This document shows, one piece after another, positions 10,838 through 55,766 of a stretch of DNA of 64,000 nucleotides (within the stretch, counting starts at the first letter, position 1; each line of letters begins with the position of its first letter). Below the pieces are notes generated by a model. It made no database searches. It saw only the letters and a program-made list of their open reading frames with translations, and was not told the origin of the DNA. This stretch comes from Macrostomum lignano. Taxonomy: Eukaryota. Location: NCBI GenBank assembly GCA_002269645.1, contig NIVC01001805.1, forward strand, positions 137,906-201,905. Direction: 5' to 3'. The position numbers were made by a program, and so were the translations under genes.

Positions 10838-10869
<32 letters not shown>

Positions 10870-11059
10870 GCGCACCGACTGGCTCAACGGGCGCCACGTG
10901 GTCTTCGGCAAAGTTCTGGAGGGCATGAGCGTTGTCAGGGCCATTGAGAACTCGCAGACGGACGGCCAGGACCGGCCGAAGCAGCCGGTGGTCATCAGAG
11001 ACAGCGGCTCCCTGCCGGTGGACGCCCCCTTCGAAGTGGAGGCCGCGCCCGCCAGCTAA
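8350..11059 (+). CDS. PPIB: Cyclophilin B (ER peptidyl-prolyl cis-trans isomerase), 2 exons: 8350-8427 and 10520-11059, 205 aa
   Basis: Exon 1 encodes a signal peptide plus KPKVTDK ([26 protein letters not shown]) and ends at donor AAG|gtaagg. Exon 2 starts at acceptor cccacag|GTG in phase 0 and carries [42 protein letters not shown] and [17 protein letters not shown] at 11255-11260. Confidence 0.96.
9386..9870 (-). mobile_element. Mariner transposase relic (3' part) in the PPIB intron
   Basis: The minus strand reads [27 protein letters not shown]...[16 protein letters not shown], which matches the mariner HPPYSPDLAPxD motif and C-terminus. A TIR-like TATGAGGGTCAGTCAAAAAG lies at about 9391. 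Confidence 0.8.
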
Positions 11060-13575: not shown

Positions 13576-14102
13576 ATGAAGTTTCTGGTCGTGTCTGCCG
13601 CCCTAATTGCGGTTGTTTTCGCCGGAGGCTATGACAGCTACGATAGCTACGATAACTACGGCGCTGGCGGCTACGGTTCCGGCTACGGCTCTGAGGGTTA
13701 CGGTGCTGGCGGCTACGGCGGCTACGAGCCTGGCTACGGTGCTGGTGGCTACGGTGGCTACGAGCCTGGCTACGGTGCTGGTGGCTACGGTGGCTACGAG
13801 CCTGGCTACGGCGCTGGCGGCTACAGTGGCTACGAGCTGGCTACGGAGCTGGCGGCTACGGTGGCTACGAGCCTGGCTACGGAGCTGGCGGCTACGGAGC
13901 TGGCGGCTACGGCGCTGGCGGCTACGGCGCTGCGGCTACGGAGCTGGCGGCTACGGAGCTGGCGGCTACGGTGCTGGCGGCTACGGCGCTGGCGGCTACG
14001 GCGCTGGCGGGCTACGGCAGCCAGCATGGCCGGGGCTATGGCAGCAGTGGCAAGGCCAGCAGCAGCAAGGCCAGCAAAGCCAAGAAGGCCGCCCGCCGTT
14101 AA
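13576..14102 (+). CDS. Secreted Gly/Tyr-rich structural protein 1 (eggshell/chorion-like), single exon, frameshifts in the repeat region
   Basis: Signal peptide MKFLVVSAALIAVVFA, then GGYDSYDSYDNY, then (GAGGYGGYEPGY)n and (GAGGY)n. The frame-corrected tail is GYGSQHGRGYGSSGKASSSKASKAKKAARR* with TAA at 14100-14102. Confidence 0.85.
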
Positions 14103-15860
14103 AGTACATGTTGTACTTGGTACAAATCGGCGTATTGCTACGCGTGAAGAACTGTTTTGTTGTAGGATCGTTTATTGCAGATTTATATGCTAGATCCATT
14201 CGGACGCTAGTGATGGTTTGCTAAATATAAAGCAGTTTTTCATATAAACTTAAAAAGTATTCAGATCCATTTGACTCTGTCTGTTTATTTCCTATTCATA
14301 AATAGTTTACGCCGTCTTCAAACTACAATAAGATTAAGGAAGTGAGAAGAGAAAAGAAAAGAGTGGAAAGGGAGAGGAGAGGGGAAAGGGAGAGGAGAGG
14401 AAAGGAGGAGGAGAGGGAAAGGGAGAGAGGGGAAAGGGAGAGGAGAGGGGAAAAGGGAGAGGAGAGGGGAAAAGGGAGAGGAGAGGGGAAAAGGGAGAGG
14501 AGAGGGGAAAAGGGAGAGGGAGGGGAAGGGAGAGGAGGGTCGGATTGCTATTTTGGAGTTTAAAAGACTAGTCCGAGGTTCGGATACTCGTAGAGCGGCT
14601 TGGCGGGCATGGGTTTTCCCAACCCTGCTAAAATTATGATCTCGTCAGTTTGATACTTATAGTTCGTACTATCAAAGCAATCGCAAAATTAGCAGGTCAT
14701 GCGAGCGTATTTAAAACTTTCCAACGTTATAATAACTTGCTACTTGATTAGCTCTGCGTTCGATTCGGTACGGAAAGGGAGAGGAGAGGGGAAAGGGAGA
14801 GGAGAGGGGAAAAGGGAGAGGAGAGGGGAAAGGGAGAGGAGAGGGGAAAGGGAGAGGAGAGGGGAAAAGGGAGAGGAGAGGGGAAAAGGGAGAGGAGAGG
14901 GGAAAAGGGAGAGGAGAGGGGAAAAGGGAGAGGAGAGGGGAAAGGGAGAGGAGAGGGGAAAAGGGAGAGGAGAGGGTAAAAGGGAGAGGAGAGGGTAAAA
15001 GGGAGAGGAGAGGGGAAAAGGGTGAGGAGAGGGGAAAAGGGTGAGGAGAGGGGAAAAGGGAGAGGAGAGGGGAAAAGGGAGAGGAGAGGGGAAAAGGGAG
15101 AGGAGAGGGGAAGGGAGAGGAGGGTCGGATTGCTTTTTTGGAGTTTAAAAAGACTAGTCCGAGGTTCGGATACTCGTAGAGCGGCTTGGCGGGCATGGGT
15201 TTTCCCAACCCCTGCTAAAATTATGATCTCGTCAGTTTGATACTTATAGTTCGTACTATCAAAGCAATCGCAAAATTAGCAAGGTCATGCGAGCGTATTT
15301 AAAACTTTCCAACGTAATAACTTGCTACTTGATTAGCTCTGCGTTCGATTCGGTACGCTAATCCACATCCCATGCAACCATCCGCGCAGATGTTAAAAAT
15401 CTTATTTAAAATAAAAATGAATTTCTGCATATCTAGCTGTCTCACCAAAGCTCCTCGTGACATCACGTGACTGGCGCTTTCTCTCATTTTTCACTCAAGA
15501 TTTTTTTGGATTTTTCCCAGTGTGACAATATTTTGACAGCAGTGACCTTTACCCTAAAAAGTATATTCGCTCTAAGCTTTAATCCCAATCCTTCTGGAAA
15601 ATTATCCTATAATTTTACTCTCCTTTTCATACATTTTCGTTGTTGATTTTTTTGGACTTGAAACTGAAACTCATAAATCATTTTGCATCGAAATTCGATT
15701 ATTTGTGGCTGCACCTGTCACTTTTTGACTGTGTCCCGGTCTTGTGGCTTTCCGGATCAAGGGTGGCAACGAGCTCAGCCAATCAGAATTAGTTTGGTGT
15801 GCGTTCTAGCAAACCGGCTCAGCCAATCAGAATCGACGTGTTTCACTAACAGGACCAGCT

Positions 15861-19276: not shown

Positions 19277-19769
19277 ATGAAGTGCCTGCTTGTCCTCGCC
19301 GCCCTGATTGCCGTGGCCTACGGTGACGGCTATGACAGAGTCGATATCTACGACACCTACTATGACGGCTACGGGGCCGGGCACTACGACGAACAAGACG
19401 GTTATGGCAGCTACGGATCGGGCCAAGGTTCAGGCTACGGGGCCGGGCACTACGACGAACAAGACGGTCATGGCAGCTACGGATCGGGCCAAGGTTCAGG
19501 CTACGGATCGGGCCAGGGTTCAGGCTACGGATCGGCCAAGGTTCAGGCTACGGATCGGGCCAAGGTTCAGGCTACGGATCGGGCCAAGGTTCAGGCTACG
19601 GATCGGGCCAGGTTCAGGCTACGGATCGGGCCAAGGTTCAGGCTACGGTTCCGGCTACGGATCGGGCCAAGGTTCAGGCTACGGATCAGGCTACGGTTCC
19701 GGCTACGGATCGCGCTATGGTTCAGGCTACGACTCTTACGGTCATGGCAAGGCCTACCGCCGCCGTTGA
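19277..19769 (+). CDS. Secreted Gly/Tyr/Ser-rich structural protein 2 (eggshell/chorion-like), single exon, frameshifts in the repeat region
   Basis: Signal peptide MKCLLVLAALIAVAYG, then DGYDRVDIYDTYYDGY, two copies of GAGHYDEQDG(Y/H)GSYGSGQGSGY, then (GSGQGSGY)n. The tail is GYDSYGHGKAYRRR* (stop at 19769). AATAAA at 19915-19920. Confidence 0.87.
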
Positions 19770-20722
19770 GCATTGCAGAAGCAACGAGACACTAAAAAAG
19801 CGCCCAAAACACTGTGTACGGTTGTAGCATTTCTCAATGCACTGTAGATTGCGTAATATGTACTCGTATTTGCGAATGATTCGAGCATAATTTATTATTT
19901 AGTTCTGTTTTCGAAATAAAACGTTCTTCTAATTTTACTTCGCCAATCAAAGCTTCCATTGTTGTCGTTTTCCCATTTCCTTGTTCACCAATCGCGCAAG
20001 CAGCCCTGCGCTGCAGATCTGGCAAAAAACCGCGAAGTTTTCTTGAAAGCAACAACAGGTAAGCAACATTTTACATACGGAAATCTAAGAAATTTCAATC
20101 AAAAAACAGATTTATTTCCATGAGGAGGTGAAACTGAAGTCTGCAGTACTGGTGCTTCTCTTAAAAGGATAAATTTAATACGCAATTACATGCACACAAA
20201 TAACGCTAAACACCCATGTACTATTCTTTAATTATTTATGCATTGTTTCAGTTAATCACAGGAAACTAAAAAAATCTGGAAATGTACCAATTGATTAATT
20301 AAGGCATACAGAGTAAAACAATAACTGACTTGAATTTCAACTCGCTTGGGGAAAATAGAATAACAAAAATGAAAACAAAGATAGCAGCTAATTTGTAGCA
20401 GCAGAGGCCGTCTATGTTAGATACGATATTTCAATTTGATAGGCAAAACAAAAGACTGGAAAATCAATCTGGAACAGCCATTAGTAGGCCGGCACAGAAA
20501 CAGCCCCGCCCGGATAAGAATTCAGAGCGGGCACGCGCAACTTGCCGCTTCTGATTGGCAGTCTGATGCTGGCGGATCAACATGGCAAATTGAAAACAGA
20601 AGGTGCGGCATCTGTGACTGGGAGAGATAGTACAAATCAAATCTCTGGTTAAACACGAGCAGTATTTTTATTATGGGACTCTCTGTTGTCACCAGACACA
20701 GCACAACACCTGCATTGACCAG

Positions 20723-20804: not shown

Positions 20805-23752
20805 GGCTGCTGCTGCTTGCCAGCGATTCCCAGGCCCGCCATCTGGCTCTGAATCTGCGGGGGACAGCGGCTGGTTGCTCAGACATCTTTCATCATTGGC
20901 ATCGGCTTCTTCTGCCCCCCCTCTCATCTGCATCCATGGCCTCAGCTTCCCGCTGCTCCTTCATCCCTGGTCTCAGCTTCCCGCTGCTCCTTCATCCCTG
21001 GTCTCAGCTTCCCGCTGCTCCTTTATCCCTGGTCTCAGCTTCCCACTGGTCCTTCATCCCTGGTCTCAGCTTCCCACTGGTCCTTCATCCCTGGTCTCAG
21101 CTTCCCACTGCTCCTTCATCCCTGGTCTCAGCTTCCCACTGCTCCTTCATCCATGGCCTCAGCTTCCCACTGCTCCTTCATCCCTGGCCTCAGTATCCCG
21201 CTGCTCATTCATCCCTGGCCTCAGTATCCCCTGCTCCTTCATCCCTGGCCTCAGTATTCCGCTGCTCCTTCATCCCTGGCCTCAGTATCCCTGCTCCTTC
21301 ATCCCTGGCCTCAGTATTCCGCTGCTCCTTCATCCCTGGCCTCAGTATCCCGCTGCTCCTTCATCCCTGGCCTTTATCACATGTACCTGCTGCAGATAAG
21401 CGGCCTGACTTGTTGGGGTTGGCCCATAGAACAGCTGCTGCTGTTGCTGCTGGAACGGCTGCTGTTGCTGCTGGAACGGCTGCTGTTGCTGCTGGAATGG
21501 CTGCTGTTGCTGCTGGAACGGCTGCTGTTGCTGCTGGAATGGCTGCTGTTGCTGCTGGAACGGCTGCTGTTGCTGCTGGAATGGCTGCTGTTGCTGCTGG
21601 AACGGCTGCTGTTGCTGCTGGAATGGCTGCTGTTGCTGCTGGAACGGCTGCTGTTGCTGCGGCAGTTGAAAGTTGTCACTAGCCTGATTAAACTGAGGCT
21701 GCTGCTGCTGCTGCCCAGTGGAATACAGCAGGGTGCCAGCAGTTTGGCTGTACAAGCCAGTCTGCATCACCTGCTGCTGGTAGAACTGGTGCTGCTGTTG
21801 CTGTTGGTACATGTGCGCCTGCTGCCCGGTTGCCAGCATCGGGCTACTCGCCGAGTAGTGCATGCCGCTTGGTGCGAACACCTGCTGCATCCCCGGCGGC
21901 TGGGCAGCGTACAGGGCCATTATGGAGTCTTTGGCCGACATTTTTGGCGGTGCTGCGGCGGCAGCTGATGATGAAGCATCCGCCACTGACGAGGTTGGCC
22001 AGCTTCCGCCATCATCAAAGATCAAATCCGGATTGACTCGCGGCTGGGTGGCCGCCGCCTGCTGCTGCTGCAGTGCCCCGTTGCCCACGGCAGCGGTGAA
22101 GTTGCCGAACTCGGAGTCCGGCGAAGTAGCCAGTCCCGACCCGTTCCTTGACGCGGCCGTTGATGAGCCGCCGCCAAGCAGGTCATCGTCGCCAATCAGC
22201 AGCAAGTCTTGCGCCGGCCGCGCTGCTGGCGGTGGCGTCGGCTGCGGAGCCGCTTCAGCTGCCTTGCTCGCAGCGGTTGCGGGCGCAGTCGCTGAGCTTG
22301 CCGGAGCCGAGGCCGAGGCAGCGGCAGGCGGTCGCGGAATCGCCCCGATGGAGGCAGCGGGCCGCTGCTGCTGCGCGACTGTGGCGGCGGATGACTTGAC
22401 GAGGCTGTACACCGAGGACGGGTCCGGCCGGGGCGGCTTAAAGTTGGCGATGAGGTAGCGCCGGTCCTCGTACTTGGCCCTGATGAACTGCTCCATGCCT
22501 GGACGGGTCAGGGGTGGGGGAGGGGGAAATGACTTTTAAAATGAAAAATACTTCGATTTATTATGCCGGTCAACTTAATTTATTGTGCACAAATGTTAGG
22601 AGTTTTTGCACTTGCAACAATCGCCTCCGGCTTTCCGCAAGCAAAACCTTTAAACTGTATCTTCATCATGTTTGACCGACTCCAGACTCGAGATTATTTA
22701 GAAAGAAATTCATTTCGGACTTAAAATTGCAATAAAACTTTTAAAACCCCAAATCCAGTGCGTCTGCATAGCGAGCAGGAGAAAAGGGGTGGCGTCTCAG
22801 CACCCCAACCAGGTCGATAAACTGGCAAGCTTGTGTCTGACTTTGACCTCTCCTTACTGCTCTCTCATTGGCTGAGCTAGATTGGACCTGTCTCCTAGGT
22901 TTCGTCTGTCTAATATTTACCTCTCTACTTACTGCGCTCTCATTGGCTGAGCTAGATTGGACTTGCCTCCTAGGTTTCGTCCGTCTAATTTTGACCTCTC
23001 TCCTTACTGCTCTCTCATTGGCTGAGATAGATTGGGCCTGCCCCTAGGCTGAGTTTCGTCCGTCTTGCGTTCACTTGTGTACATCGAGTTAAATGCTTGG
23101 TGTTCATTCTTAACCCCCCCCCCACATGCTCCTCAGGCCGCAAACCCCGAGGAAGGAAAGAAAATTTTAGCTGCCACAATAAATTCAAATGACCATGCGC
23201 AGACAAACTACTGAAAGATGAGTAGACGCTCTACTTTTTCACAGCTTTTTTTCGTGAGAGAGCAGTAAAGACAGATGCCTGATCTGGTATCTGCGGTTTG
23301 CGGCAGCGCCCAAAGCCCCGGTACGAATTATAGGTAAAGTAAATAGCCTCAAAGCCGCCAATAAAAACAAAAAACCCACCAGCGTCGCTGTTCGGCCTGC
23401 GAAAGCTGCTAGGCAGATTGGCCTCGTAGGCGGCCCTGGCCAGCGTGTTGCCCATAGCGGCCACCCCGGCCACCTGGTCCAGAGTCCACGAGTCCAAATT
23501 AACGGACTTCACCTTGGAGATGTGCACGCCCAACTTTCGGTGGATGCCGGCGCACCGGATGCAGATGAACACGCCGATGTTCCAGCTGGCCCAGCGCGGA
23601 CTCTTGGCCTCGCAGTCGGCGCAGTACTTGTTGTCCTCCTCTTTGAGCAGCGAGGCTAAGGCCTCCTGCAGCAGCTCTCTATCCTTGTCCGCCTTGCCGC
23701 CTGAGGCAGCCGACCTGCCGTTCCGCTTCTGCTGCTGGTGCAGGTAGCTCAT
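20723..23752 (-). CDS. SMAP1: SMAP1/2-type ArfGAP, 3 coding exons: 23752-23380, 22498-21387, 20854-20723
   Basis: The ArfGAP zinc finger reads [52 protein letters not shown]. The junction NSDAG|[10 protein letters not shown] has consistent phase 1. A Q-rich low-complexity region follows. The last exon reads [16 protein letters not shown]...[10 protein letters not shown]. The poly(A) signal lies at ~20667-20672 on the minus strand. Confidence 0.92.
20935..21372. repeat. ~31 bp minisatellite in the last SMAP intron
   Basis: The unit CCCGCTGCTCCTTCATCCCTGG(T/C)CTCAG(CT/TA)T is repeated ~14 times. Confidence 0.93.
22835..23065. repeat. Three degenerate ~70 bp tandem copies in SMAP intron 1
   Basis: TTGACCTCTCCTTACTGCTCTCTCATTGGCTGAGCTAGATTGG...CCTAGG...TTTCGTC(T/C)GTC occurs three times. 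Confidence 0.85.
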
Positions 23753-25785
23753 GGCTGGCTGTGGGTACTGGGATGGGGGAGCAACAGTCAATAATTATGA
23801 TTGCACAATGTAGCTCATGGCTGGCTGTGGGTACTGGGATGGGGGAGCAACAGTCAATAATTATGATTGCACAATGTAGCTCATGGCTGGCTGTGGGTAC
23901 TGGGATGGGGGAGCAACAGTCAATAATTATGATTGCACAATGTAGCTCATGGCTGGCTGTGGGTACTGGGATGGGGGAGCAACAGTCAATAATTATGATT
24001 GCACAATGTAGCTCATGGCTGGCTGTGGGTACTGGGATGGGGGAGCAACAGTCAATAATTATGATTGCACAATGTAGCTCATGGCTGGCTGTGGGTACTG
24101 GGATGGGGGAGCAACAGTCAATAATTATGATTGCACAATGTAGCTCATGGCTGGCTGTGGGTACTGGGATGGGGGAGCAACAGTCAATAATTATGATTGC
24201 ACAATGTAGCTCATGGCTGGCTGTGGGTACTGGGATAGGGGAGCAACAGTCAATAATTATGATTGCACAATGTAGCTCATGGCTGGCTGTGGGTACTGGG
24301 ATGGGGGAGCAACAGTCAATAATTATGATTGCACAATGTAGCTCATGGCTGGCTGTGGGTACTGGGATAGGGGAGCAACAGTCAATAATTATGATTGCAC
24401 AATGTAGCTCATGGCTGGCTGTGGGTACTGGGATGGGGGAGCAACAGTCAATAATTATGATTGCACAATGTAGCTCATGGCTGGCTGTGGGTACTGGGAT
24501 GGGGGAGCAACAGTCAATAATTATGATTGCACAATGTAGCTCATGGCTGGCTGTGGGTACTGGGATGGGGGAGCAACAGTCAATAATTATGATTGCACAA
24601 TGTAGCTCATGGCTGGCTATGGGTACTGGGATGGGGAGCAACAGTCAATAATTATGATTGCACAATGTAGCTCATGGCTGGCTGTGGGTACTGGGATAGG
24701 GGAGCAACAGTCAATAATTATGATTGCACAATGTAGCTCATGGCTGGCTGTGGGTACTGGGATGGGGGAGCAACAGTCAATAATTATGATTGCACAATGT
24801 AGCTCATGGCTGGCTGTGGGTACTGGGATGGGGGAGCAACAGTCAATAATTATGATTGCACAATGTAGCTCATGGCTGGCTGTGGGTACTGGGATGGGGG
24901 AGCAACAGTCAATAATTATGATTGCACAATGTAGCTCATGGCTGGCTATGGGTACTGGGATGGGGGAGCAACAGTCAATAATTATGATTGCACAATGTAG
25001 CTCATGGCTGGCTGTGGGTACTGGGATGGGGGAGCAACAGTCAATAATTATGATTGCACAATGTAGCTCATAGCTGGCTGTGGGTACTGGGATGGGGGAG
25101 CAACAGTCAATAATTATGATTGCACAATGTAGCTCATGGCTGGCTGTGGGTACTGGGATGGGGGAGCAACAGTCAATAATTATGATTGCACAATGTAGCT
25201 CATGGCTGGCTGTGGGTACTGGGATGGGGGAGCAACAGTCAATAATTATGATTGCACAATGTAGCTCATGGCTGGCTGTGGGTACTGGGATGGGGGAGCA
25301 ACAGTCAATAATTATGATTGCACAATGTAGCTCATGGCTGGCTGTGGGTACTGGGATGGGGGAGCAACAGTCAATAATTATGATTGCACAATGTAGCTCA
25401 TGGCTGGCTATGGGTACTGGGATGGGGGAGCAACAGTCAATAATTATGATTGCACAATGTAGCTCATGGCTGGCTGTGGGTACTGGGATGGGGGAGCAAC
25501 AGTCAATAATTATGATTGCACAATGTAGCTCATGGCTGGCTGTGGGTACTGGGATAGGGGAGCAACAGTCAATAATTATGATTGCACAATGTAGCTCATG
25601 GCTGGCTGTGGGTACTGGGATGGGGGAGCAACAGTCAATAATTATGATTGCACAATGTAGCTCATGGCTGGCTGTGGGTACTGGGATGGGGAGCAACAGT
25701 CAATAATTATGATTGCACAATGTAGCTCATGGCTGGCTGGGTGGGTAATGGGGGAGCAACAGTCAATAATTATGATTGCACAATG
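23745..25785 (-). repeat. 66 bp minisatellite, ~31 copies; each unit contains the SMAP splice acceptor and ATG
   Basis: The minus-strand unit is CATTGTGCAATCATAATTATTGACTGTTGCTCCCCCATCCCAGTACCCACAG|CCAGCCATGAGCTA. The last copy runs directly into [10 protein letters not shown]. Confidence 0.96.
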
Positions 25786-28925: not shown

Positions 28926-30734
28926 CTAAGCCTAAGGATAGCTAATGCTAGGCCTATGCTATATTTTAATCACAATGTATAGCAAAAAATGTTCTTGTTA
29001 CATTAGGCCCTATAATGGCATTGCCAGATCCAGGCCTAGCCATTAGAAAATGGGCTCCAGTGCCGGAACTCTAGCAATTATTGTACAGAACTTGCATTTT
29101 TAATCAAAAAGCTTTCTGACTTAAATTTCTAGCACAGAGTAGGCCTAGGATGTCTACCAAACAGCAAAAAATGTTTTTTTTCTGCTCAGATGATACATCA
29201 TCCTGACTATGGCCTATGCCTATGGGTTTAGGCCTAGGCTATGCCTATCAGTATCATCCCCTTATGCTATGGCTGGACATATAAGTTATAGGCCTAACTT
29301 GAGTTGAGTTGAAAGTATATGCAATGCTGATGCAAGCGGTCCCAGGTCAATTCGGTGACAAGACATGTCGGTGACAACAACTTCGGTGACAACTTGGGAC
29401 GTTTCGGTGACACCAGTGGTCAATTCGGTGACAAGCTTTTTAGACTTGATTTGACTATTTTTCGTTGTTAAATATTAAAATATTGCTGTTACTAAACTCT
29501 TATTAAAGTAATAAAGGTTCGTATGCTATCAATTATCATTTTGTTTGAGTGCGTTTGGAGGCATAACACTTATGTTTAACAGCGCGCACTTAATTTTATC
29601 CATACTTTTAATTTTTCAACTCAAGTCAACGAGAATTGATGTTTCGATTTTTTATACTACATCTACATTTACATGTATTGTAGATGTACATGTACGTCTT
29701 AAAAGCCATTGAACGAGTTCAGAAAACAACTGTATATCTATAGGACTATAGCGTAGCTTATGACTGTACATGTTTTTATGTGCTAATTCAGGGACTATAA
29801 CTTATAAGGCAAGGGGCGCCAATAGGGGCGGACGTACCCGTGGATAGAGCTTGATAGAACTTATTGAGCCCCCAAAACCTAAGTTTGCACCCTTTAAACT
29901 AGATTTTTCGCCTCCTACACGCATTTTTGCACCCCTAGCTTAAAAATTGGCGCCCCTCATTGACGCCACGCCACCCCTCATTGGCGCCCCTCATTGACGC
30001 CACGCCAAAAATTGGCGCCACTCATGAATTATTGGCGCCCAAAACTTGGACCGATGCCCCGGCCCCCCTTCGGCCCCCAAATGAAATTTTCGATCCGCTA
30101 CTGTATGTGCGCCTCACAGAGTATAGATTATGGATGAGTTGGCTTGAAATTTATCATGTAATTAATTCTGGCGCTTATTGACAAAGCTGTACTGTGAACT
30201 TATGGTCGTGGCGATCGTGACCATGTTAACATAAACACATGTGTACAAATGTAAAGTCATACAAAACTTGGTCTTCTACATTTAGTAAATGAATAACACT
30301 TATTCGTTCATTCAGCAACACAGTTAAGTGAATGTGATAATTATACTATATAAGAAAATTGCTGCGCTCTTGTTAGCACTCATTACATCACAATGACTGG
30401 TTGCTAACCGCTAAATCCACGAATCACAGAACCAGCATTAAGTTATGCTAGGTAATCTAAACGGATGTGGTCAATCAGAATTGCTTACTTTCTACGCAAT
30501 CGAAATTCTGTGATATTGTGATATTCTATTGGTTAAAACGCCATCACATTACATGTATATTGCGCATGCGTCCTATATCCATACTTGTACAGAAGCAATT
30601 GAACGCAAGACCCATAGCTACCAGTCGGCGCACTATAATATATTTACTCTTTAACACTCAAGAATATCGACTTAATATCTTCTCTGCATCTAAAAAGCAA
30701 CTAGCTAGATAAAGAATACCAGCTCAATTGTCTG

Positions 30735-33500
30735 ATGGAAGTCGAAGAAGACGTCTGTCCAGCGTGTGTCAGAGCAGTAACTGACGAGGAGCCTGCATTA
30801 AATTGTGACAAGTGCAAACATTGGTTCCATCGACTGTGTTTGACTGGTAAGTTTATGCCCTATATTCTGCATTCCATCAACTTAGTGTGCATTCACTCTT
30901 AAAATGGAAGAGGAGAAAGAGGGTAGGGGAGAGAAGGTGGGGAGAGAGGGTAGAGGGGAAGAAGGTAGTGGAGAGAGTGAAGAGGAAAAGAGAGTAGGGG
31001 AGAGAAGGTGGGGAGAGGAGGTAGAGAGGAGAGAGGGTATGTGGAGAGATGATAAATGGCTGAAATTGTTTTTGCTTTTTATTTTAGGAGCATCGTTCAT
31101 TTCTGCTGCACATTATAAGAAGTTGATGAAGAAGAGTTCTTTTTCTTGGTGCTGCATGATCTGCACTACTCAGGAGGTACATGTAGAGAGCGATGCTGAG
31201 GTTGAAGTTGCTGCTGCCGGTGGTGATGAGGTAGAGAGCGATGCCGAAATCGATGTTGCTGCTGCCGGTGGTGATGAGGTAGAGAGCGATGCCGAAATCG
31301 ATGTTGCTGCTGCCGGTGGTGATGAGGTAGAGAGCGATGCCGAAATCGATGTTGCTGCTGCCGGTGGTGATGAGGTAGAGAGCGATGCCGAAATCGATGT
31401 TGCTGCTGCCGGTGGTGATGAGGTAGAGAGCGATGCCGAAATCGATGTTGCTGCTGCCGGTGGTGATGAGGTAGAGAGCGATGCCGAAATCGATGTTGCT
31501 GCTGCCGGTGGTGATGAGGTAGAGAGCGATGCCGAAATCGATGTTGCTGCTGCCGGTGGTGATGAGGTAGAGAGCGATGCCGAAATCGATGTTGCTGCTG
31601 CCGGTGGTGATGAGGTAGAGAGCGATGCCGAAATCGATGTTGCTGCTGCCGGTGGTGATGAGGTAGAGAGCGATGCCGAAATCGATGTTGCTGCTGCCGG
31701 TGGTGATGAGGTAGAGAGCGATGCCGAAATCGAAGTTGCTGCTGCCGGTGGTGATGAGGTAGAGAGCGATGCCGAAATCGAAGTTGCTGCTGCCGGTGGT
31801 AGCGAAAGTGATGAGGTAGAGAGCGATGTTGAGATCCAAGTTGCTGCTACTGCTGATTCATCGATTGAAGACCCAGACCCTCAACCAGTCGCTGATCACA
31901 ATCGTCCAGAGACATTTGAGGTACTTCAAAACGGAAGCAATAGAGGTTCAGTCCTTGTTGTTTCCTCAAAAGGATACAGCTATGGTTTTCACCGTAGGCG
32001 TGGTGATCACGAATACTACAGATGCACTCAGCGCAATCGACATACGCCATGCTGTGCGACCCTAAATCGCAGAGCCGGTGAAGACTTCCGACCAGGAAAA
32101 AGGAACCACTGCCATGCACCAACAGCTGATGCTTGTGCAGTACGAAAAATTATTCGAGACGTGAAGACATCAGCAGCTGCGGATGTCTTCAAATCTGCTG
32201 CGGCTCTATCTGAGAAGCGACTTCTACACAGTTATCGTTCGTCAGAGGCTAAAAACTTGCCAAATCCAGCGAATCTTGCTAGAACAGCTAATCGTTTTCG
32301 AGAAAGGCAACGGCCAGAGGAGCCAAAGACATTAAACTTTGAGCTGCAGCACGAAGCGATTCCCGATGGCTTTTGCAGAAGCGATGTTCGAGTTGGGGAC
32401 CGTCGTCACCTTGTCTTTGCGACTGAGCAACAGATTGCTTTGTTGAAAAAAACTTCCGACATCTACATGGACGGAACCTTCTCAATCGTAAGAAGGCCTT
32501 TTGTGCAGCTCTATTCACTTCACGGTTTTCTGAGGGCGGAAGGACAAATAAAACAGGTAATAATTAAGTTCCTACTGAAACGCTTATAAAGCATAAAGCA
32601 TAAAGTATAAAGCCCACCAAGTATAAAGCATGGAGGCATAGCAAAGAAACTCTAAATCAAATGGTGTTACTCTTAGTAGCGGAATACGCAAATCATAGTT
32701 TATGCATCCTATATATTTAATTTTTTTTCTAAAAGCCGTTTTATTTAAACCAAAAACAGGTACCATTGGCCTTCATTATCATGTCTGGGAGACGAACCCG
32801 GGACTACAAAGCCATTTTAAGGGAAGTTCGAAGATTCGCTCCCGATTTCTCACCCGCGAGATTCGTTCTCGACTATGAGCAGCCAGCCTGGAAGGCGGTT
32901 CGACGCATCTTTCCGCAGGCTGAAGTGCAGGGCTGCAATTTCCACTGGACACAGGCAGTCTGGCGAAAAGTTCAGAACCTGGGTCTGCAGCAGTCCTATC
33001 GTGATGATGATGGCACAGAACGGTTCGTCCAGAAGTTGATGGCACTGCCGTACCTGCCACGTGACGAGATTAACGAGGTGTTTGAAAGCCTCCGAGCTTC
33101 GCAAGCTGCTCAGGCAGACGAAAGACTGCAGGAACTATGCGAGTACATTGGCAGTACATGGTTGGGCGAAGGCAGCAACTGGAAAGCGGATGACATTTGC
33201 GTGTTTGGTCAGCCCATCAGGACCAACAACGACCTGGAGGGCTGGCACTATCGCCTAAACCGTAAAGCTGGGAGTCGCAACCTCCAGTTCTATCTGTTGC
33301 TGCAACTGCTCCACGAGGAAGCTATCCTGGTGCCACTCCAGGCTCACCTGCTGTCCAGAGGGGTACTGCGTCGAGAGCAGCGGCAAGGCTACCGCACAGT
33401 TCAGTCTCGTTTGTTTCGCTACTGGGCGGAACATGAACAAGGTACTCGAAGCACTCGGCGGCTGCTTAAATCCTGTGGTCGTCTCTTTAATCCGAAGTGA
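30735..33500 (+). CDS. MULE transposase with N-terminal PHD finger, acidic repeat linker, FLYWCH-like zinc finger and DDE domain; 3 exons: 30735-30846, 31088-32556, 32760-33500 (773 aa)
   Basis: PHD: CPAC...ALNCDKCKHWFHRLCLTG|ASFI...WCCMIC, joined across a phase-1 intron (ACTG|gtaagt, ttttag|GA). FLYWCH-like: GYSY...YYRCTQR...CCATL...NHCH. DDE: IYMDGTF, FVLDYE, GCNFHW, RTNNDLEGWH. Exon lengths sum to 2322 nt with no internal stop. Confidence 0.92.
31181..31830 (+). repeat. 48 bp coding repeat (VESDAEIDVAAAGGDE) x ~13 inside the transposase
   Basis: In-frame tandem units between the PHD and FLYWCH domains. Confidence 0.95.
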
Positions 33501-36410
33501 CATGACGACTGTGTTGCACCAAAGACTACATATGTACTAGACATATACACTAGACTGTGCATGTACTAGAATCAAGGCCGGATATTTAGGGAACTATACT
33601 ACTCGCGTATACCATGTACTCTCGCAGTAGCGCAACCAGAAATTTGTTGAGGGGGCGAATCATTCGCTTGGTCCCCTTTGATTTTTTCCGGTCCCCCGAA
33701 GGAGGGGCAACCGCCCTCCCCCCCAGCTGGTTGCGCCAGCTGAATTACTCTCATTCTCATTCGTATACTCATTATATTGTACTGTACATGTTGTGTCGAC
33801 TTGTGTTGACGCCTTTTTGGTGCAAATATGTGTACTGTTTCTCTATCCTTGCTAAAATACACTGCTAAATAACTGAACTAGATGTATCATTCAGCTCATT
33901 ATACTATCGATTAATTTCATATACTTACACTGTACGTACTGTAACTAATTGCTTTGAAATAACTTGATTTAGTAACCACAATAAATTTGTTTACGAAAAT
34001 CAGACACCAATAAGAAACTATAGCCTTTGACTATACATCAAAGGGGGGAGGGGGCGGGGGGCGTCGGTCTTAGTTTTGGGCCCAATTATTCATGAGTATG
34101 AGGGGCGCCAATTTTTAAGCTAGGGGTGCAAAAATGCGTGTAGGAGGCGAAAAATCTAGTTTTTAAAGGGTGCAAACTTAGGTTTTGGGGGCTCAATAAG
34201 TTCTATCAAGCTCTATCCACGGGTACGTCCGCCCCTATTGGCGCCCCTTGCCTTATAAGTTATAGTCCCTGAATTAGCACATAAAAACATGTACAGTCAT
34301 AAGCTACGCTATAGTCCTATAGATATACAGTTGTTTTCTGAACTCGTTCAATGGCTTTTAAGACGTACATGTACATCTACAATACATGTAAATGTAGATG
34401 TAGTATAAAAAATCGAAACATCAATTCTCGTTGACTTGAGTTGAAAAATTAAAAGTATGGATAAAATTAAGTGCGCGCTGTTAAACATTAAGTGTTATGC
34501 CTCGAAACGCACTCAAACAAAATGATAATTGATAGCATACGAACCTTTATTACTTTAATAAGAGTTTAGTAACAGCATATTTTAATATTTAACAACGAAA
34601 AATAGTCAAATCAAGTCTAAAAAGCTTGTCACCGAATTGACCACTGGTGTCACCGAAACGTCCCAAGTTGTCACAGAAGTTGTTGTCACCGACATGTCTT
34701 GTCACCGAATTGACCTGGGACCATGCAAGCCGACCTGCACTATAGCAAACTAATAACTACTGCATTTTTAGCTACTTGTTTTATTAAAAATCCTGTTAGT
34801 TTTTAAAAAAAAATCTTAACCTTACAAGAATATACATATATATATCAAAAAAATATATTTTTGGTAAAGTAGATAGACTGTCAAGTCTCAATCTGAAGAT
34901 CAATAGAACATTGCTGAACTTTACTCAAATTTTTCATACCAAATTTACGCGAAATTTTACAATCAATTCAAACAAAGTCTTCCTTTAGATGCGTGAGTTT
35001 AGGCTATTAATTTCCTCAGAATGTAGTATAGTAAGCTAAAATAAGTAAAAATGAAAAAATACAACTAACGAAGTCAGCGGGCATTTGAGTCTAGATGAGG
35101 ACTAAGGGCAATCAAAAGAAATTTTAGGAATTTAGGCGAGAATTCTAAAGAATAGTCTAATAACTTCTTGTGGCTGGCGATGATGGCGCCCCTTTTCCTT
35201 TGGGTTGGCAGTCCTAAGTATTCAGTATATTCTGAACTACTTTAATTGAATGGACGGAGTGATTGAATCCAAAACAATTGACAAAATACTTCGAGTGTCA
35301 GAAAACCAAGCATTAGAAGTTGCTTGGCTAACTTCATACTATAGGCTCAGGTCTCTTGGTTGTCTTCTTCTAGTGGTCCTTGATACTTAACTGCCCGCTA
35401 ATTTTGATGTAGTCTGTGGCATTAAAAGGCAAGAATAGAGTGGGAATATCTTGTACGCAATAAGCTTCTTTCCATATACATGTACAGTACTTATTCATAC
35501 TTAGTGGTGTGTGGAGTGAATCGAGGTTTTTGCTTTAGACAGTTGCGTCGTCGAGCGCCCCCTGTAGATAATTTTTTAATTGAGAATTCAGGGCCTGAAG
35601 CAAAGATCATATATACAGAGAGAATATAAGATCTATGGCCTGAAGGTACCTTTTGTTGAAAAGTTTGCTAGCCGCTGTTGACATTATAGTCAGTCGGACT
35701 CGGCACACAATGAGCTGTTTATTTGTTTAATTTAAAAAAAACAGCGAAAGGACGACACCATGGGGAGTTAAAAACAACAGCAAAAAATCCTGACGTGAAT
35801 GAACCGCATGCTGTCAAATAAATAGAAGCTCAATCAACGAAAAGTCGGCTAACTACGGAGCGCACAAAACGCGATTATTGGAATAGAAGAAGCGCCTAAG
35901 CACGGTTTTTATGAGGTTTTCTTATGAAAAATGAAAGCAAATCAGCGATGCAATTGTTCACAAAATGCAGCACTCATGTACAATTCTATTATTCTGGCAG
36001 TGCAAATGCACAAGAGTTGCATCCTGCATTATAGGGTAAATATTGGTTAATAGACAATTAAATAAGGATTAAAATGATACATCAAGACAATTCCCGAGTG
36101 CCCCTGTTGTTGTTTCTACTGTTCAGTAATATTACATTACCAGTAATATTACAAGACCAGTAATATTGTATTACTAGTAGTACTCGTATTACATGACCAG
36201 TAATGTTGCATTACCAGTAACATTACATGACAGTAATATTGCATTACGGGTAATACTGCAGGACTAGTATTACTGCTGCAGTCTACATGCGTCTCAGTCT
36301 CAGCTCCCCTCAGATTTCGGGCCTTCGGAAAGATACAAATGAAGCCATTATGCTCATTTGAGCACAGAGAGCAAGTTCCCTCAGAGTCCCTGTGTGGTCT
36401 GTGCCCAGAT

Positions 36411-47980
<11,570 letters not shown>

Positions 47981-51299: not shown

Positions 51300-52190
51300 C
51301 TTTGTTCACCAATTTCGGCGCCTCTTTCGCCAATTCTGGCGGCCTCTTTCACCAATTCTGGCGGCATCTCTTTCACCAATTATCACGGCGTCTCTTTCAC
51401 CAATTCTGGCGCTTCTTTCACCAATCCTGGCGGCGTCTCTTTCACCAATTCTGGCGGCGTCTCTTTCACCAATCCTGGCGGCGTCTCTTTCACCAATTCT
51501 GGCGGCGTCTCTTTCACCAATTCTGGCGGCGTCTCTTTCACCAATTCTGGCGGCGTCTCTTTCACCAATTCTGGCGGCGTCTCTTTCACCAATTCTGGCG
51601 GCGTCTCTTTCACCAATCCTGGCGGCGTCTCTTTCACCAATTCTGGCGGCGTCTCTTTCACCAATCCTGGCGGCGTCTCTTTCACCAATTCTGGCGGCGT
51701 CTCTTTCACCAATCCTGGCGGCGTCTCTTTCACCAATTCTGGCGGCGTCTCTTTCACCAATCCTGGCGGCGTCTCTTTCACCAATTCTGGCGTCTCTTTC
51801 ACCAATTCTGGCGGCGTCTCTTTCACCAATTCTGGCGGCGTCTCTTTCACCAATTCTGGCGTCTCTTTCACCAATTCTGGCGGCGTCTCTTTCACCAATC
51901 CTGGCGGCGTCTCTTTCACCAATTCTGGCGGCGTCTCTTTCACCAATTCTGGCGCCTCTTTCACCAATTCTGGCGGCGTCTCTTTCACCAATTCTGGCGC
52001 CTCTTTCACCAATTCTGGCGGCGTCTCTTTCACCAATTCTGGCGGCCTCTTTCACCAATTCTGGCGCCTCTTTCACCAATTCTGGCGCCTCTTTCACCAA
52101 TGCTGCCGCCTCTTTCACCAATCCTGGCGCCTCTTTCACCAATGCTGGCGCCTCTTTCACCAATTCTGGCGCCTCTTTCACCAATTCTGA
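51300..52190. repeat. 24/21 bp satellite TTCACCAATTCTGGC(GGC)GTCTCT
   Basis: About 38 copies, with TT/TC variants partly alternating. Confidence 0.97.
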
Positions 52191-54076: not shown

Positions 54077-55766
54077 AGTCTGACGGCGACAGACTATCCA
54101 TTGCTACAGATGAAGAAAGCAAAGTTGAGCGGCTGAGCGACCGCCGGCCCAGCGCATCTCTCGGGCGAGCGACAGAGACTGGAAGCTCCATCTCGGGCCT
54201 CAGGGCTGGGCCAGTCGTCTTGAAGTTCGGGACAGCCAGCCGTGAGTGTCGTCCTGTAGAGCAAAGCCTCTCTGATGGGTTGTTTGGGCCGTGTCTAGTA
54301 GGGATATGCTTGAGTAGGGATATGCTTGAGTAGGGATATGCTTGAGTAGGGATATGCTTGAGTAGGGATATGCTTGAGTAGGGATATGCTTGAGTAGGGA
54401 TATGCTTGAGTAGGGATATGCTTGAGTAGGGATATGCTTGAGTAGGGATATGCTTGAGTAGGGATATGCTTGAGTAGGGATATGCTTGAGTAGGGATATG
54501 CTTGAGTAGGGATATGCTTGAGTAGGGATATGCTTGAGTAGGGATATGCTTGAGTAGGGATATGCTTGAGTAGGGATATGCTTGAGTAGGGATATGCTTG
54601 AGTAGGGATATGCTTGAGTAGGGATATGCTTGAGTAGGGATATGCTTGAGTAGGGATATGCTTGAGTAGGGATATGCTTGAGTAGGGATATGCTTGAGTA
54701 GGGATATGCTTGAGTAGGGATATGCTTGAGTAGGGATATGCTTGAGTAGGGATATGCTTGAGTAGGGATATGCTTGAGTAGGGATATGCTTGAGTAGGGA
54801 TATGCTTGAGTAGGGATATGCTTGAGTAGGGATATGCTTGAGTAGGGATATGCTTGAGTAGGGATATGCTTGAGTAGGGACATGCTTGAGCGTGGCAATC
54901 ATAGCTATTATCTGCAAGCGAATTCCCGGAACCAGCATCCGCAGACACCCGACCCGTCCATCAAGCAGACAGGCATGCAAGAGCCGCCGAAGATCACTCT
55001 GACGGGTGCCCAGGACTCCGGCAGCTGCGAGTCCACCACGGAGCCCCCCGACAACCGGCAGCAGCCCCAGCGGCATCAACCCGACGCCGCGGTCACCGGG
55101 TCGCTGGCGTCCATCCTGACGCCGAAGAGCCGGCACTCAAAGCCGGCCAGCCTCGCCGATGACGACGACTCGCCCGAGTTTCGCCTGTTCGACCGGCAAA
55201 GCTTCGAGTCCTTGCTCAGGCGCGAGCTGGAGTACCAGCGCCGGGTGGAGGAACGTCGACTCAACGCCGGCGAGGGCCGCCTGGTGGAGGGCGAGATCAA
55301 GTTCGACGACGATCCGGACGCGGAGGAGGACAAGGCCAAGGCCAGCCCGGAGCTGGCGGACGGCTGCGTGCTGCCATCGCGATTCGGCGACTTCCCCGAC
55401 GAGCTGCTGGCCAAGCCGATACAGGAAATCGATAGGCACATCAGGAAGCGGGTGAGGAGTGGGAGAATTTGGGGAGAGTACGGATATCGGGAACGGGAAC
55501 TCAAGAGGCTGCTCAAGCACAATTCTGTGCCAAACGCCATTTCTTCCAGTCATTCGTTGTGGTCAACACCCGATTCCGGCGGAAGTACATCTACAGATTC
55601 TCCGCCAATGAGGCCTTCTACTGCATGCCGCCCTGGAATCCCATCAGAAAGTTCTTTGTGTACTTGGCGACCAACCAGTTTGTTGACTACATAATCATGC
55701 TGACCATCCTGGCCAACTGCGTGTGCCTCGCCCTGCCGAATGACGTGTCTGTTGCAGAGTGAGTGC

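What the first reader, a model, noticed from the sequence alone, without database searches (positions are those of the whole stretch)
29338..34722. Intact MULE whose transposase carries an intron-split N-terminal PHD finger
Seen: a perfect TSD, near-identical TIRs and an uninterrupted 773 aa spliced ORF with a C4-H-C3 PHD (missing from the ORF track because it is split by an intron), a FLYWCH-like finger and complete D-D-CxxH-E residues. Established: PHD fingers commonly read histone H3 tails (H3K4 methylation state), and MULE transposases usually carry FLYWCH, WRKY or SWIM fingers. Inference: a potentially active transposon that could target integration or expression according to chromatin state. 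It sits in the AT-rich gap between the 5' end of SMAP and the 3' end of OGA. I cannot check whether this domain combination has already been described.
Basis: partly seen in the sequence, partly recalled or inferred. Interest (0 to 1): 0.8.

Follow-up and report, generated by a model that had tools for sequence, protein, structure and literature searches.

The report
Intact flatworm Mutator transposon with PHD finger
This is a complete, recently inserted Mutator-like "jumping gene" in the flatworm Macrostomum lignano whose transposase starts with a histone-reader-type (PHD) zinc finger, but the same protein layout turns out to be common in transposons of many invertebrates, so it is a good example of a known kind, not a new one.

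Summary
Window 29338-34722 is a 5,385-bp Mutator-like element (MULE). It has 623/625-bp terminal inverted repeats (2 substitutions, 3 small indels) and a perfect 8-bp target-site duplication (ATGCAAGC). A three-exon gene with two GT..AG introns gives an open 773-aa transposase.

The protein has four parts:
- an N-terminal C4HC3 PHD finger split by intron 1
- a 48-bp x 12.9 in-frame acidic minisatellite
- a FLYWCH finger
- a MULE core with D499, D565, C586xxH589 and E687

Each end carries 4-5 copies of TCGGTGACA, found nowhere else in the window. The host is Macrostomum lignano or a very close relative.

The PHD is Pygopus-type by sequence and by predicted fold, and keeps most Pygo H3-tail contact residues except the cage tyrosine.

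The novelty claim fails. The same PHD-FLYWCH-MULE layout occurs in cnidarian, crustacean and mollusc proteins: 19 of 83 transposase homologues carry it. The PHD subtype has thousands of relatives, including a Helitron-like protein. PHD fingers in MULE and Rehavkus transposases are already published. The element is not Rehavkus.

Chromatin-guided integration remains a plausible but untested inference. Copy number and splicing could not be checked.

The parts
29330..29337 (.). Left copy of the 8-bp target-site duplication ATGCAAGC
   Evidence: Identical 8-mer directly outside both TIR ends
29338..29960 (+). Left terminal inverted repeat (623 nt)
   Evidence: Inverted-repeat pairs I1-I4. Global alignment with the right arm shows 2 substitutions and 3 small indels.
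29352..29433 (+). Five subterminal direct copies of TCGGTGACA, the putative transposase binding sites
   Evidence: Nine exact copies in the window, all in the two element ends; 0.23 expected by chance
29947..30039 (+). Cluster of four TTGGCGCC motifs at the inner edge of the left TIR / start of the 5' leader
   Evidence: Seven of 9 window matches lie in the element; weak enrichment, 1 of 100 shuffles reached 9 matches
30735..30846 (+). Exon 1: start codon and the first half of the PHD finger (C8, C11, C24, C27, H32, C35)
   Evidence: In-frame stop upstream of the ATG. Donor is CTG|GTAAGT. Homologues start 3-10 residues before the first Cys.
30847..31087 (+). Intron 1 (241 nt, GT..AG, phase 1). 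It contains a GA-rich tandem repeat and has a tandem TAG|GAG acceptor.
   Evidence: Only this splice gives an open frame. TRF arrays at 30907-31049. Both PHD halves align in frame to homologues.
31088..32556 (+). Exon 2: second half of the PHD (to C63, nt 31164), acidic repeat linker, FLYWCH finger (aa 321-380, nt 31936-32115) and first catalytic Asp D499 (nt 32470-32472)
31183..31800 (+). In-frame 48-bp x 12.9 minisatellite encoding a 16-aa acidic repeat (VESDAEIDVAAAGGDE in the TRF unit's register). Ten units are identical.
   Evidence: TRF 98% matches, 0 indels; unit listing
32557..32759 (+). Intron 2 (203 nt, GT..AG, phase 0)
   Evidence: The junction GQIKQ|VPLAF matches the family consensus KQVPLxF.
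32760..33500 (+). Exon 3: D565 (32871-32873), C586/H589 (32934-32945), E687 (33237-33239), C-terminal region and stop codon
   Evidence: The Pfam MULE domain covers aa 497-591.
33980..33985 (+). AATAAA, a candidate polyadenylation signal. It is the only one between the stop codon and the right TIR.
34098..34722 (-). Right terminal inverted repeat (625 nt)
34627..34708 (-). Four exact subterminal copies of TCGGTGACA. A fifth copy carries the single TIR substitution at 34675.
34723..34730 (.). Right copy of the 8-bp target-site duplication ATGCAAGC

Best explanation
Window 29338-34722 is one autonomous, recently inserted copy of a FLYWCH-type (Phantom-like) Mutator-like DNA transposon in Macrostomum lignano or a very close relative.

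**Shown**
- Full transposon anatomy: long near-identical TIRs with 4-5 subterminal 9-mers per end, an 8-bp TSD, and one three-exon gene.
- The gene encodes a 773-aa transposase built as PHD, acidic tandem-repeat linker, FLYWCH, MULE DDE core.

**Inferred mechanism**
- The FLYWCH (WRKY-GCM1 fold) finger binds the TCGGTGACA repeats and brings the ends together.
- The core (D499, D565, E687, with the CxxH motif) cuts the element out and pastes it into a target cut with an 8-bp stagger.
- The N-terminal Pygopus-type PHD most likely docks on the N-terminal tail of histone H3 and tethers the transposase or transpososome to nucleosomes. Its preference for a methylation state is unknown.
- The acidic repeat acts as a flexible, expandable spacer.

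The PHD is not a one-off capture. It is the ancestral N-terminal module of a MULE lineage found across Metazoa.

**Sub-confidences**
- MULE identity: about 0.97.
- This copy is transposition-competent: about 0.55.
- The PHD binds the H3 tail: about 0.4.
For: - **Anatomy.** TIRs, TSD and CDS were all reproduced.
- **Domains.** MULE and FLYWCH score above their Pfam cut-offs. PHD passes its cut-off when scanned alone.
- **Catalysis.** The catalytic residues fall in columns that are invariant across 13 aligned family members.
- **End repeats.** TCGGTGACA occurs 9 times, only in the element ends, against 0.23 expected.
- **Host.** The neighbouring cyclophilin ORF is 99% identical over 100% of its length to an M. 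lignano protein.
- **Pygo-type PHD.** The best solved relatives are Pygopus PHDs, E about 1e-5. The AF2 model has mean pLDDT 77.6. Foldseek's top ten hits are all Pygo PHDs, TM 0.70-0.79 (normalised to the query), rmsd 0.9-2.4 A.
- **Histone contacts.** Fiedler 2008 (PMC2726290) names the hPygo1 contacts V350, D352, A356, I357, E360, W366 and Y379. The aligned window residues are V15, D17, A21, L22, D25, W30 and Y47 (alignment).
- **Lineage-wide architecture.** Nineteen of 83 homologues have the PHD. Four homologues show PHD, FLYWCH and MULE matches in Pfam. 'PHD_Pygo' plus MULE labels appear on the source records.
- **A transposon in another phylum.** The Actinostola homologue sits between 60-nt, 88%-matching TIRs that carry their own subterminal repeats.
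- **Youth.** Perfect TSD, open ORF and ten identical 48-bp units.
Against: - There is no RNA evidence for either splice. Without splice 1 the PHD is destroyed.
- No second copy or fragment lies in the window. None of the element's ORF products is on record in the protein collection, so multi-copy status and mobility are unshown.
- The K4me cage is incomplete. D6 replaces hPygo1 Y341, and across the family only the Trp is invariant.
- The window PHD has a 3-residue insertion (ASF) at the exon junction relative to all homologues.
- The PHD scores below the Pfam cut-off in the full-length protein.
- Binding of FLYWCH to the 9-mers is inference only.
- Near-identical TIRs within one copy do not date a DNA transposon insertion.
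Confidence: 0.6

Rival explanations
1. Same transposon, but the PHD-like cross-brace zinc finger is not a histone reader. It would instead serve transposase oligomerisation, binding of a host or co-factor protein (as the rear face of Pygo PHD binds BCL9 HD1), or DNA binding at the element ends.
For: - The methyl-lysine cage is incomplete. D6 sits at the Y341 position, and the D352 position varies across the family.
- Pygo PHD itself is bifunctional, binding both histone and HD1 (PMC2726290).
- Some PHD fingers bind non-histone partners (PMC3241642 abstract). Some PHD-signature domains lack H3 binding (PMC9640981 title and abstract).
- From my own knowledge, not checked here: the C-terminal cysteine-rich domain of piggyBac transposase is a PHD-like cross-brace finger that binds TIR DNA.
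- Tandem arrays of 2-4 such PHDs occur in relatives (P0216, P0244, P0311).
Against: - The residues that anchor H3 A1/T3 and divide the pockets are kept, and W, Y and the acidic residue after Cys3 are conserved family-wide (W30, Y47, D25, A21, L22, V15).
- The FLYWCH finger already supplies a DNA-binding domain.
Confidence: 0.3
2. The copy is structurally intact but not mobile. It would be a single or low-copy relic whose transposase is disabled by the 206-residue acidic minisatellite, by the 3-residue insertion in the PHD loop, or by failure to splice the GA-repeat intron.
For: - No other copy in 58.6 kb of flanking sequence.
- No identical or near-identical protein among 5.8 billion clustered proteins. 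The best hit is 56% identical.
- Exact look-ups of the ORF pieces found nothing.
- The two M. lignano relatives on record look like broken or chimeric models (P0001, P0081).
- The ASF insertion is unique to this copy.
Against: - Open 773-aa frame, every family-invariant residue present, consensus splice signals, perfect TSD and near-perfect TIRs.
- Repetitive low-complexity linkers at the same position are normal in this lineage (P0001, P0025, P0040, P0244), so the repeat is likely tolerated.
- Absence from protein collections is weak evidence, because transposable-element genes are often masked before annotation.
Confidence: 0.35
3. The element belongs to Rehavkus, the PHD-bearing relative of MULEs with minisatellites.
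For: It has a PHD finger and a minisatellite. Both are listed as Rehavkus hallmarks in PMC6446971, Table 1 and text.
Against: - The window transposase has no significant similarity to the Rehavkus-3_TC and Rehavkus-1_HR DDE domains. BLASTP gives E of 0.67 or worse, and the family HMM scores are negative.
- It matches Pfam MULE directly.
- The TSD is 8 bp, not 9.
- The minisatellite lies inside the CDS, not before the 3' TIR.
Confidence: 0.02
4. It is a domesticated host gene (a PHD-FLYWCH chromatin factor derived from a transposase), not a transposon.
For: Transposase-derived FLYWCH and WRKY-GCM1 proteins that lack transposon ends are known (PMC1702500).
Against: - 623-bp TIRs, an 8-bp TSD and subterminal repeats bracket the gene.
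- The catalytic residues are intact.
- It lies in an intergenic AT-rich gap.
Confidence: 0.02

Closest known systems
Phantom / FLYWCH-type animal MULEs (Marquez & Pritham 2010; group 20 in Dupeyron et al. 2019, PMC6446971)
   Same: - MULE DDE transposase with an N-terminal FLYWCH finger.
- TSD within the reported 8-10 bp range.
- Very long TIRs, reported up to 613 bp.
- Hosts include Platyhelminthes.
- Minisatellites are noted in some members.
   Different: - An extra N-terminal Pygo-type PHD and an in-frame acidic minisatellite. Neither is listed for Phantom in PMC6446971 Table 1.
- Placement inside the Phantom clade was not tested, because no Phantom sequences were available and the original paper is not held.
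Rehavkus DNA transposons (Repbase; outgroup in PMC6446971)
   Same: PHD finger in the transposase, long TIRs, an associated minisatellite, animal hosts.
   Different: - No detectable similarity of the DDE core.
- Rehavkus has a 9-bp TSD, against 8 bp here.
- The Rehavkus minisatellite lies before the 3' TIR, not in the CDS.
- No FLYWCH finger is listed for Rehavkus.
MULE transposases of Ciona and C. elegans with a C-terminal PHD (Babu et al. 2006, PMC1702500)
   Same: A MULE transposase combining a WRKY-GCM1-fold DNA-binding finger with a PHD accessory finger.
   Different: In those proteins the PHD is C-terminal and is preceded by two classic zinc fingers. Here the PHD is N-terminal, Pygo-type, and followed by FLYWCH.
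Pygopus PHD finger (hPygo1/2, Drosophila Pygo; PDB 2vpe, 2vpg, 4up0, 3zpv)
   Same: - Best sequence and fold match.
- Same C4HC3 spacing, with 12 residues between Cys2 and Cys3.
- WFHR-x-C-(x)-TG motif.
- Conserved equivalents of V350, D352, A356, I357, E360, W366 and Y379.
   Different: - Cage residue Y341 is replaced by Asp.
- A 3-residue longer loop after TG.
- It sits in a transposase, not a Wnt co-activator.
- No BCL9-type partner is known.
RAG2 PHD finger in V(D)J recombination (own knowledge; RAG2 is named among K4me3-preferring PHDs in PMC2726290)
   Same: A functional analogy only: a PHD that reads the H3 tail and couples a DDE transposase-derived recombinase to marked chromatin.
   Different: - A different transposase superfamily (Transib/RAG).
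- The RAG2 PHD sits on a separate subunit.
- Histone binding is shown for RAG2 and not for this protein.

Membership tests
Mutator-like elements (MULE superfamily) | Transposase with the MULE DDE domain (Pfam PF10551) above the curated cut-off | tested here: met
   33.7 bits against a cut-off of 27.6, aa 497-591
Mutator-like elements (MULE superfamily) | Catalytic D, D, E with a C/DxxH motif shortly after the second D | tested here: met
   D499, D565, C586xxH589 and E687, all in invariant columns of a 13-sequence family alignment
Mutator-like elements (MULE superfamily) | Terminal inverted repeats, often long, flanked by a TSD of about 8-11 bp | tested here: met
   623/625-bp TIRs; 8-bp TSD ATGCAAGC
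Phantom family of MULEs | FLYWCH zinc finger upstream of the DDE core (present in part of the family) | tested here: met
   PF04500 at 25.1 bits against a cut-off of 23.6, aa 321-380
Phantom family of MULEs | TSD 8-10 bp and TIR 18-613 bp, as tabulated in PMC6446971 | tested here: met
   TSD is 8 bp. The TIR of 623 bp is marginally above the tabulated maximum.
Phantom family of MULEs | Phylogenetic placement of the DDE domain inside the Phantom clade | not tested
   No Phantom sequences were at hand. PMC2927773 is not held, and the stored part of the Dupeyron alignment lacks Phantom entries.
Rehavkus | Rehavkus-type DDE core | tested here: not met
   BLASTP E of 0.67 or worse and negative HMM scores against Rehavkus-3_TC and Rehavkus-1_HR
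Rehavkus | Minisatellite just before the 3' TIR, and a 9-bp TSD | tested here: not met
   The only arrays lie in intron 1 and the CDS. The TSD is 8 bp.
Rehavkus | PHD finger in the transposase | tested here: met
   C4HC3 PHD at aa 8-63
PHD finger, Pygopus subtype (PF00628 / PF27108 PHD_Pygo) | C4HC3 zinc ligands and a profile score above the cut-off | tested here: inconclusive
   - All eight ligands are present.
- PF00628 scores 26.2 bits for the isolated domain (cut-off 24) but 18.7 bits in the full protein.
- PF27108 is not in the local Pfam copy. It is recorded on homologues.
PHD finger, Pygopus subtype (PF00628 / PF27108 PHD_Pygo) | PHD cross-brace fold closest to Pygo | tested here: met
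   AF2 model with pLDDT 77.6. The top ten Foldseek PDB hits are all Pygo PHDs, TM (query-normalised) 0.70-0.79, rmsd 0.9-2.4 A.
PHD finger, Pygopus subtype (PF00628 / PF27108 PHD_Pygo) | Residues of the H3 A1 / T3 / K4me pockets (hPygo1 Y341, V350, D352, A356, I357, E360, W366, Y379) | tested here: inconclusive
   Seven of 8 are kept or conservatively replaced (V15, D17, A21, L22, D25, W30, Y47). Y341 is replaced by D6. Across the family the Y341 and D352 positions vary.
PHD finger, Pygopus subtype (PF00628 / PF27108 PHD_Pygo) | Binding to (methylated) histone H3 tail, or to a BCL9-type partner | not testable with these tools
   Needs peptide binding assays

The most novel reading that the evidence does not exclude
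The Pygo-type PHD is a working H3-tail reader that steers this MULE lineage to marked, promoter-proximal or open chromatin. That would make it a pan-metazoan chromatin-targeting module, also reused by Helitron-like elements. The M. lignano copy would be an active element usable as an endogenous transposon vector or mutagen in this regeneration model.
Probability: 0.15. Interest if true: 0.65.

Novelty: new member of a known kind. Interest (0 to 1): 0.3.

Why it matters
- **For annotation.** It gives a clean, fully delimited reference copy of an autonomous MULE family in Macrostomum lignano: ends, TSD, splice structure and binding-site candidates.
- **For the lineage.** An N-terminal Pygopus-type PHD is a standing feature of a widespread animal MULE lineage, not an oddity of one copy.
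- **If the PHD binds H3 tails.** These elements would be a tractable system for testing chromatin-guided integration of a cut-and-paste transposon. MULEs are noted for a bias toward inserting in or near genes (PMC6446971).
- **If the copy is active.** It could be developed into a genetic tool for a flatworm model.

None of this is surprising to a transposon specialist. PHD accessory domains in transposable elements, including MULE relatives, are already described.

Tried and rejected
- **Copy number and empty sites.** Exact-product look-ups of the 561-aa, 244-aa and 239-aa ORF pieces found nothing. No near-identical protein appeared in the 5.8-billion-protein search. No other copy lies in the window. 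No eukaryotic genome DNA collection was available.
- **Phantom clade placement.**
  - The Phantom paper is not held.
  - The stored part of the Dupeyron alignment has Rehavkus but no Phantom sequences.
  - The Stylophora sequence in Dupeyron's tree (A0A2B4RWQ0) has a different accession from my two Stylophora hits (A0A2B4RVF7, A0A2B4RH73). The element could therefore not be assigned to their 'Ghost-Cnidaria' or 'MULE-Mollusca' groups.
- **A misreading, corrected.** I first took PF27108 to be something other than the PHD, because some hits with low query coverage carry it. Searches show its name is PHD_Pygo, and one search shows those hits do have the PHD.
- **Conserved intron positions.** Rejected. 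The Actinostola homologue has its whole PHD in exon 1, and the P0025 gene is intronless.
- **TSD at the Actinostola element.** None could be recognised.
- **Literature.** Searches for an explicit description of N-terminal PHD + FLYWCH + MULE found none. The Oxytricha and Maverick papers that matched the search terms were irrelevant.
- **Domesticated gene and Rehavkus readings.** Both were considered and rejected (see rival explanations).


Full report
**1. What is in the sequence**

Window 29338-34722 is bounded by an inverted repeat that runs almost unbroken for 623 nt on the left (29338-29960) and 625 nt on the right (34098-34722). A global alignment of the two arms shows 2 substitutions and 3 small indels. 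Similarity collapses beyond about 625 nt.

Directly outside both ends lies the same 8-mer, ATGCAAGC, at 29330-29337 and 34723-34730. Shifting the boundary by one base does not give a 9-bp duplication.

The outermost 100 nt of each end carry direct copies of TCGGTGACA: five on the left and four exact on the right. The fifth on the right is hit by the one terminal substitution. The motif occurs nowhere else in 64 kb, against 0.23 expected.

**2. The gene**

Only one combination of GT..AG introns gives an open frame: 30735-30846, 31088-32556 and 32760-33500, for 773 aa. Its intron coordinates name the flanking exon bases, because the intron itself is 30847-31087. A second intron, 32557-32759, also exists.

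- The ATG is preceded by an in-frame stop.
- Unspliced read-through of exon 1 stops after 55 codons.
- The donor CTG|GTAAGT and the pyrimidine-rich acceptor are strong.
- The acceptor is a tandem TAG|GAG.
- Both junctions fall inside blocks that align without frame change to homologues: HRxCxTG|...Y...WxCxxC and KQ|VPLxF.
- A single AATAAA lies at 33980, between the stop codon and the right TIR.

**3. Domains**

| Domain | Score (bits) | Cut-off (bits) | Residues |
|---|---|---|---|
| MULE PF10551 | 33.7 | 27.6 | 497-591 |
| FLYWCH PF04500 | 25.1 | 23.6 | 321-380 |
| PHD PF00628, N-terminal 77 aa alone | 26.2 | 24 | 8-63 |
| PHD PF00628, full-length protein | 18.7 | 24 | 8-63 |

- The PHD ligands are C8, C11, C24, C27, H32, C35, C60 and C63.
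- D499, D565, C586/H589 and E687 sit in columns that are invariant in an alignment with 12 homologues.
- Between the PHD and FLYWCH lies a 48-bp x 12.9 tandem repeat, in frame, with 98% matches and ten identical units. It encodes an acidic 16-residue unit.

**4. Host and neighbourhood**

The cyclophilin-B ORF at 10520-11059 is 99% identical over its full length to a Macrostomum lignano protein. The next-best hits of comparable coverage are 80% identical or less. The window therefore comes from M. lignano or a very close relative.

The element lies in an AT-rich gap (GC 0.33-0.37). On one side is an ArfGAP (SMAP-like) exon at 23231-23788 (-). On the other are NAGidase (OGA) exons at 39253-40006 (-).

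The rest of the window holds no other copy or fragment of the element. The window is unusually rich in minisatellites, with more than 20 arrays. The in-CDS repeat may reflect a host-wide tendency.

**5. The PHD is Pygopus-type**

- Among solved structures the best sequence matches are Pygopus PHDs (E about 1e-5). They are far ahead of other PHDs.
- An AlphaFold2 model built on eight family PHDs has mean pLDDT 77.6.
- The ten best Foldseek matches in the PDB are all Pygo PHDs, with TM 0.70-0.79 (query-normalised) and rmsd 0.9-2.4 A.
- The source database labels homologues PF27108 'PHD_Pygo'.

Fiedler et al. 2008 (PMC2726290) define the hPygo1 contacts. W366, Y341 and D352 form the walls of the K4me2 cavity, and V350 and A356 form its base. 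A356, I357, W366 and Y379 form the T3 pocket. E360 is needed for anchoring A1 and R2.

By the alignment the window equivalents are W30, D6, D17, V15, A21, L22, Y47 and D25. Seven of eight are kept or conservatively replaced. The cage tyrosine is lost.

Across the family the Trp, the Tyr and the acidic residue after Cys3 are conserved. The Y341 and D352 positions vary. This fits an H3-tail-binding surface, but it says nothing firm about methylation preference.

**6. The architecture is common, not novel**

- A search of 5.8 billion clustered proteins gave 83 transposase homologues. Named hosts include Actinostola, Stylophora, Acropora, Palaemon, Crassostrea, Dreissena, Tegillarca, Gigantopelta and Branchiostoma.
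- Nineteen of the 83 carry the N-terminal PHD by a family profile. Many of the rest are N-terminally truncated gene calls.
- Four homologues scanned with Pfam each show PHD, FLYWCH and MULE matches at E <= 0.01, though not all clear the curated cut-offs.
- A PHD-only profile searched against 1.84 billion representatives found 4,959 proteins at E <= 1e-3 and 668 at E <= 1e-10.
- The best 150 PHD hits are mostly short N-terminal fragments, median 139 aa. At least 30 of them continue into the FLYWCH/MULE part.
- Some relatives have 2-4 tandem PHDs. One has three PHDs in front of DUF6570 (PF20209). From my own knowledge DUF6570 is associated with the N-terminal part of Helitron proteins. This was not checked here.
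- The linker between PHD and FLYWCH is repetitive in several relatives, with unrelated units. M. lignano P0001 has an 18-aa acidic unit, P0025 has EEPIADQHAD, and P0244 has a Pro/Ser-rich unit.
- The Actinostola homologue sits between 60-nt, 88%-matching TIRs with their own subterminal repeats. PHD-bearing members in another phylum are therefore transposons too.
- Intron positions are not shared.

**7. Comparison with what is published**

- Dupeyron et al. 2019 (PMC6446971) list Phantom with TSD 8-10 bp, TIR 18-613 bp, FLYWCH, SWIM or no finger, and hosts that include Platyhelminthes.
- The same paper lists Rehavkus with a PHD finger, a 9-bp TSD and a minisatellite before the 3' TIR.
- Babu et al. 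2006 (PMC1702500) describe MULE transposases of Ciona and C. elegans with a C-terminal PHD.
- PMC8557442 calls PHD a common accessory domain of transposable elements.
- The window transposase shows no significant similarity to two Rehavkus DDE domains taken from the Dupeyron supplement. It is not Rehavkus.
- By its features it fits the FLYWCH-type, Phantom-like MULEs. I could not test clade placement.
- I found no held paper that explicitly describes the N-terminal PHD-FLYWCH-MULE layout. Repbase was not available.

**8. How it most likely works**

Shown: the anatomy of an autonomous cut-and-paste element.

Inferred:
- FLYWCH binds the TCGGTGACA repeats.
- The DDE core excises the element and integrates it with an 8-bp stagger.
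- The PHD docks on the H3 tail.
- The acidic repeat is a spacer.

From memory only: the 9-mer contains a TGAC core reminiscent of the W-box bound by WRKY domains. This is a lead, not a test.

Rival readings are a non-histone role for the PHD and an immobile single copy. Both stay open because no RNA, copy-number or binding data could be obtained.

**9. Verdict**

The element is a new, well-preserved member of a known kind, and the claimed unusual domain combination is a lineage-wide and widespread feature. Interest is modest.

Noticed in passing
window 8-5895: A 5.9-kb satellite of a 44-bp unit (137 copies, 93% matches) with strong strand skew (GC skew about -0.4, AT skew +0.31).
   Followed up: no
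window 23744-25785: A 66-bp x 31 minisatellite (98% matches) that begins inside the upstream end of the ORF holding the ArfGAP (SMAP-like) first coding exon and extends 5' of it. It lies between that gene and the transposon.
   Followed up: no
whole window (e.g. 36803-37056, 38208-38957, 40949-41814, 51305-52189, 54297-54890, 57357-58201): More than 20 separate high-scoring minisatellite arrays in 64 kb. Several lie inside or between exons of the OGA-like and ion-channel genes. The genome appears unusually prone to minisatellite expansion, which may explain the in-frame repeat in the transposase.
   Followed up: partly
window 30907-31049; also 14774-15122 and 62590-63289: Intron 1 of the transposase holds a GA-rich tandem repeat (units of 13, 29 and 71 bp). 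Arrays of similar purine/pyrimidine-rich composition occur elsewhere in the window. BLASTN at E <= 1e-3 did not link them.
   Followed up: partly
window 31086-31090: The intron 1 acceptor is a tandem TAG|GAG (NAGNAG). Use of the second AG would drop Gly38 of the conserved TG motif of the PHD.
   Followed up: no
window 13576-14193 and 19277-19795: Two ORFs with signal-peptide-like starts (MKFLVVSAALIAVVFA.., MKCLLVLAALIAVAYG..) followed by Gly/Tyr-rich tandem repeats. They may be paralogous secreted structural proteins.
   Followed up: no
window 21342-22496 (-): The ORF downstream of the ArfGAP exon carries a long Q-rich tract with about 11 copies of QQQQPF, matching a 21-bp tandem array at 21437-21660.
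   Followed up: no
proteins P0001 and P0081 (M. lignano, UniRef A0A1I8J146 and A0A1I8IC46): These belong to a second, 56-71% identical MULE subfamily in M. lignano. It has a different acidic tandem repeat (18-aa unit AAADEESEQVATASESED) at the same linker position. Both models look truncated or chimeric.
   Followed up: partly
protein P0311: Three tandem copies of the same PHD subtype precede a DUF6570 domain. From my own knowledge (not checked) that domain is linked to Helitron proteins, which would mean this PHD module is shared between transposon superfamilies.
   Followed up: partly
window 29815-30039 and 34104-34245: Seven of the nine TTGGCGCC motifs in the window lie in the inner parts of the two TIRs. 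Four are same-strand copies at 29947-30039. They could be promoter or secondary binding elements. Enrichment is weak: 1 of 100 shuffles reached 9.
   Followed up: partly
L001 4555-4614 / 9726-9785 and 5651-5677: The Actinostola PHD-FLYWCH-MULE gene is flanked by 60-nt TIRs (88% matching) with GTTTCGCC / AGTTCGCCTA subterminal repeats. There is an extra internal copy of part of the TIR, and no TSD could be recognised.
   Followed up: partly
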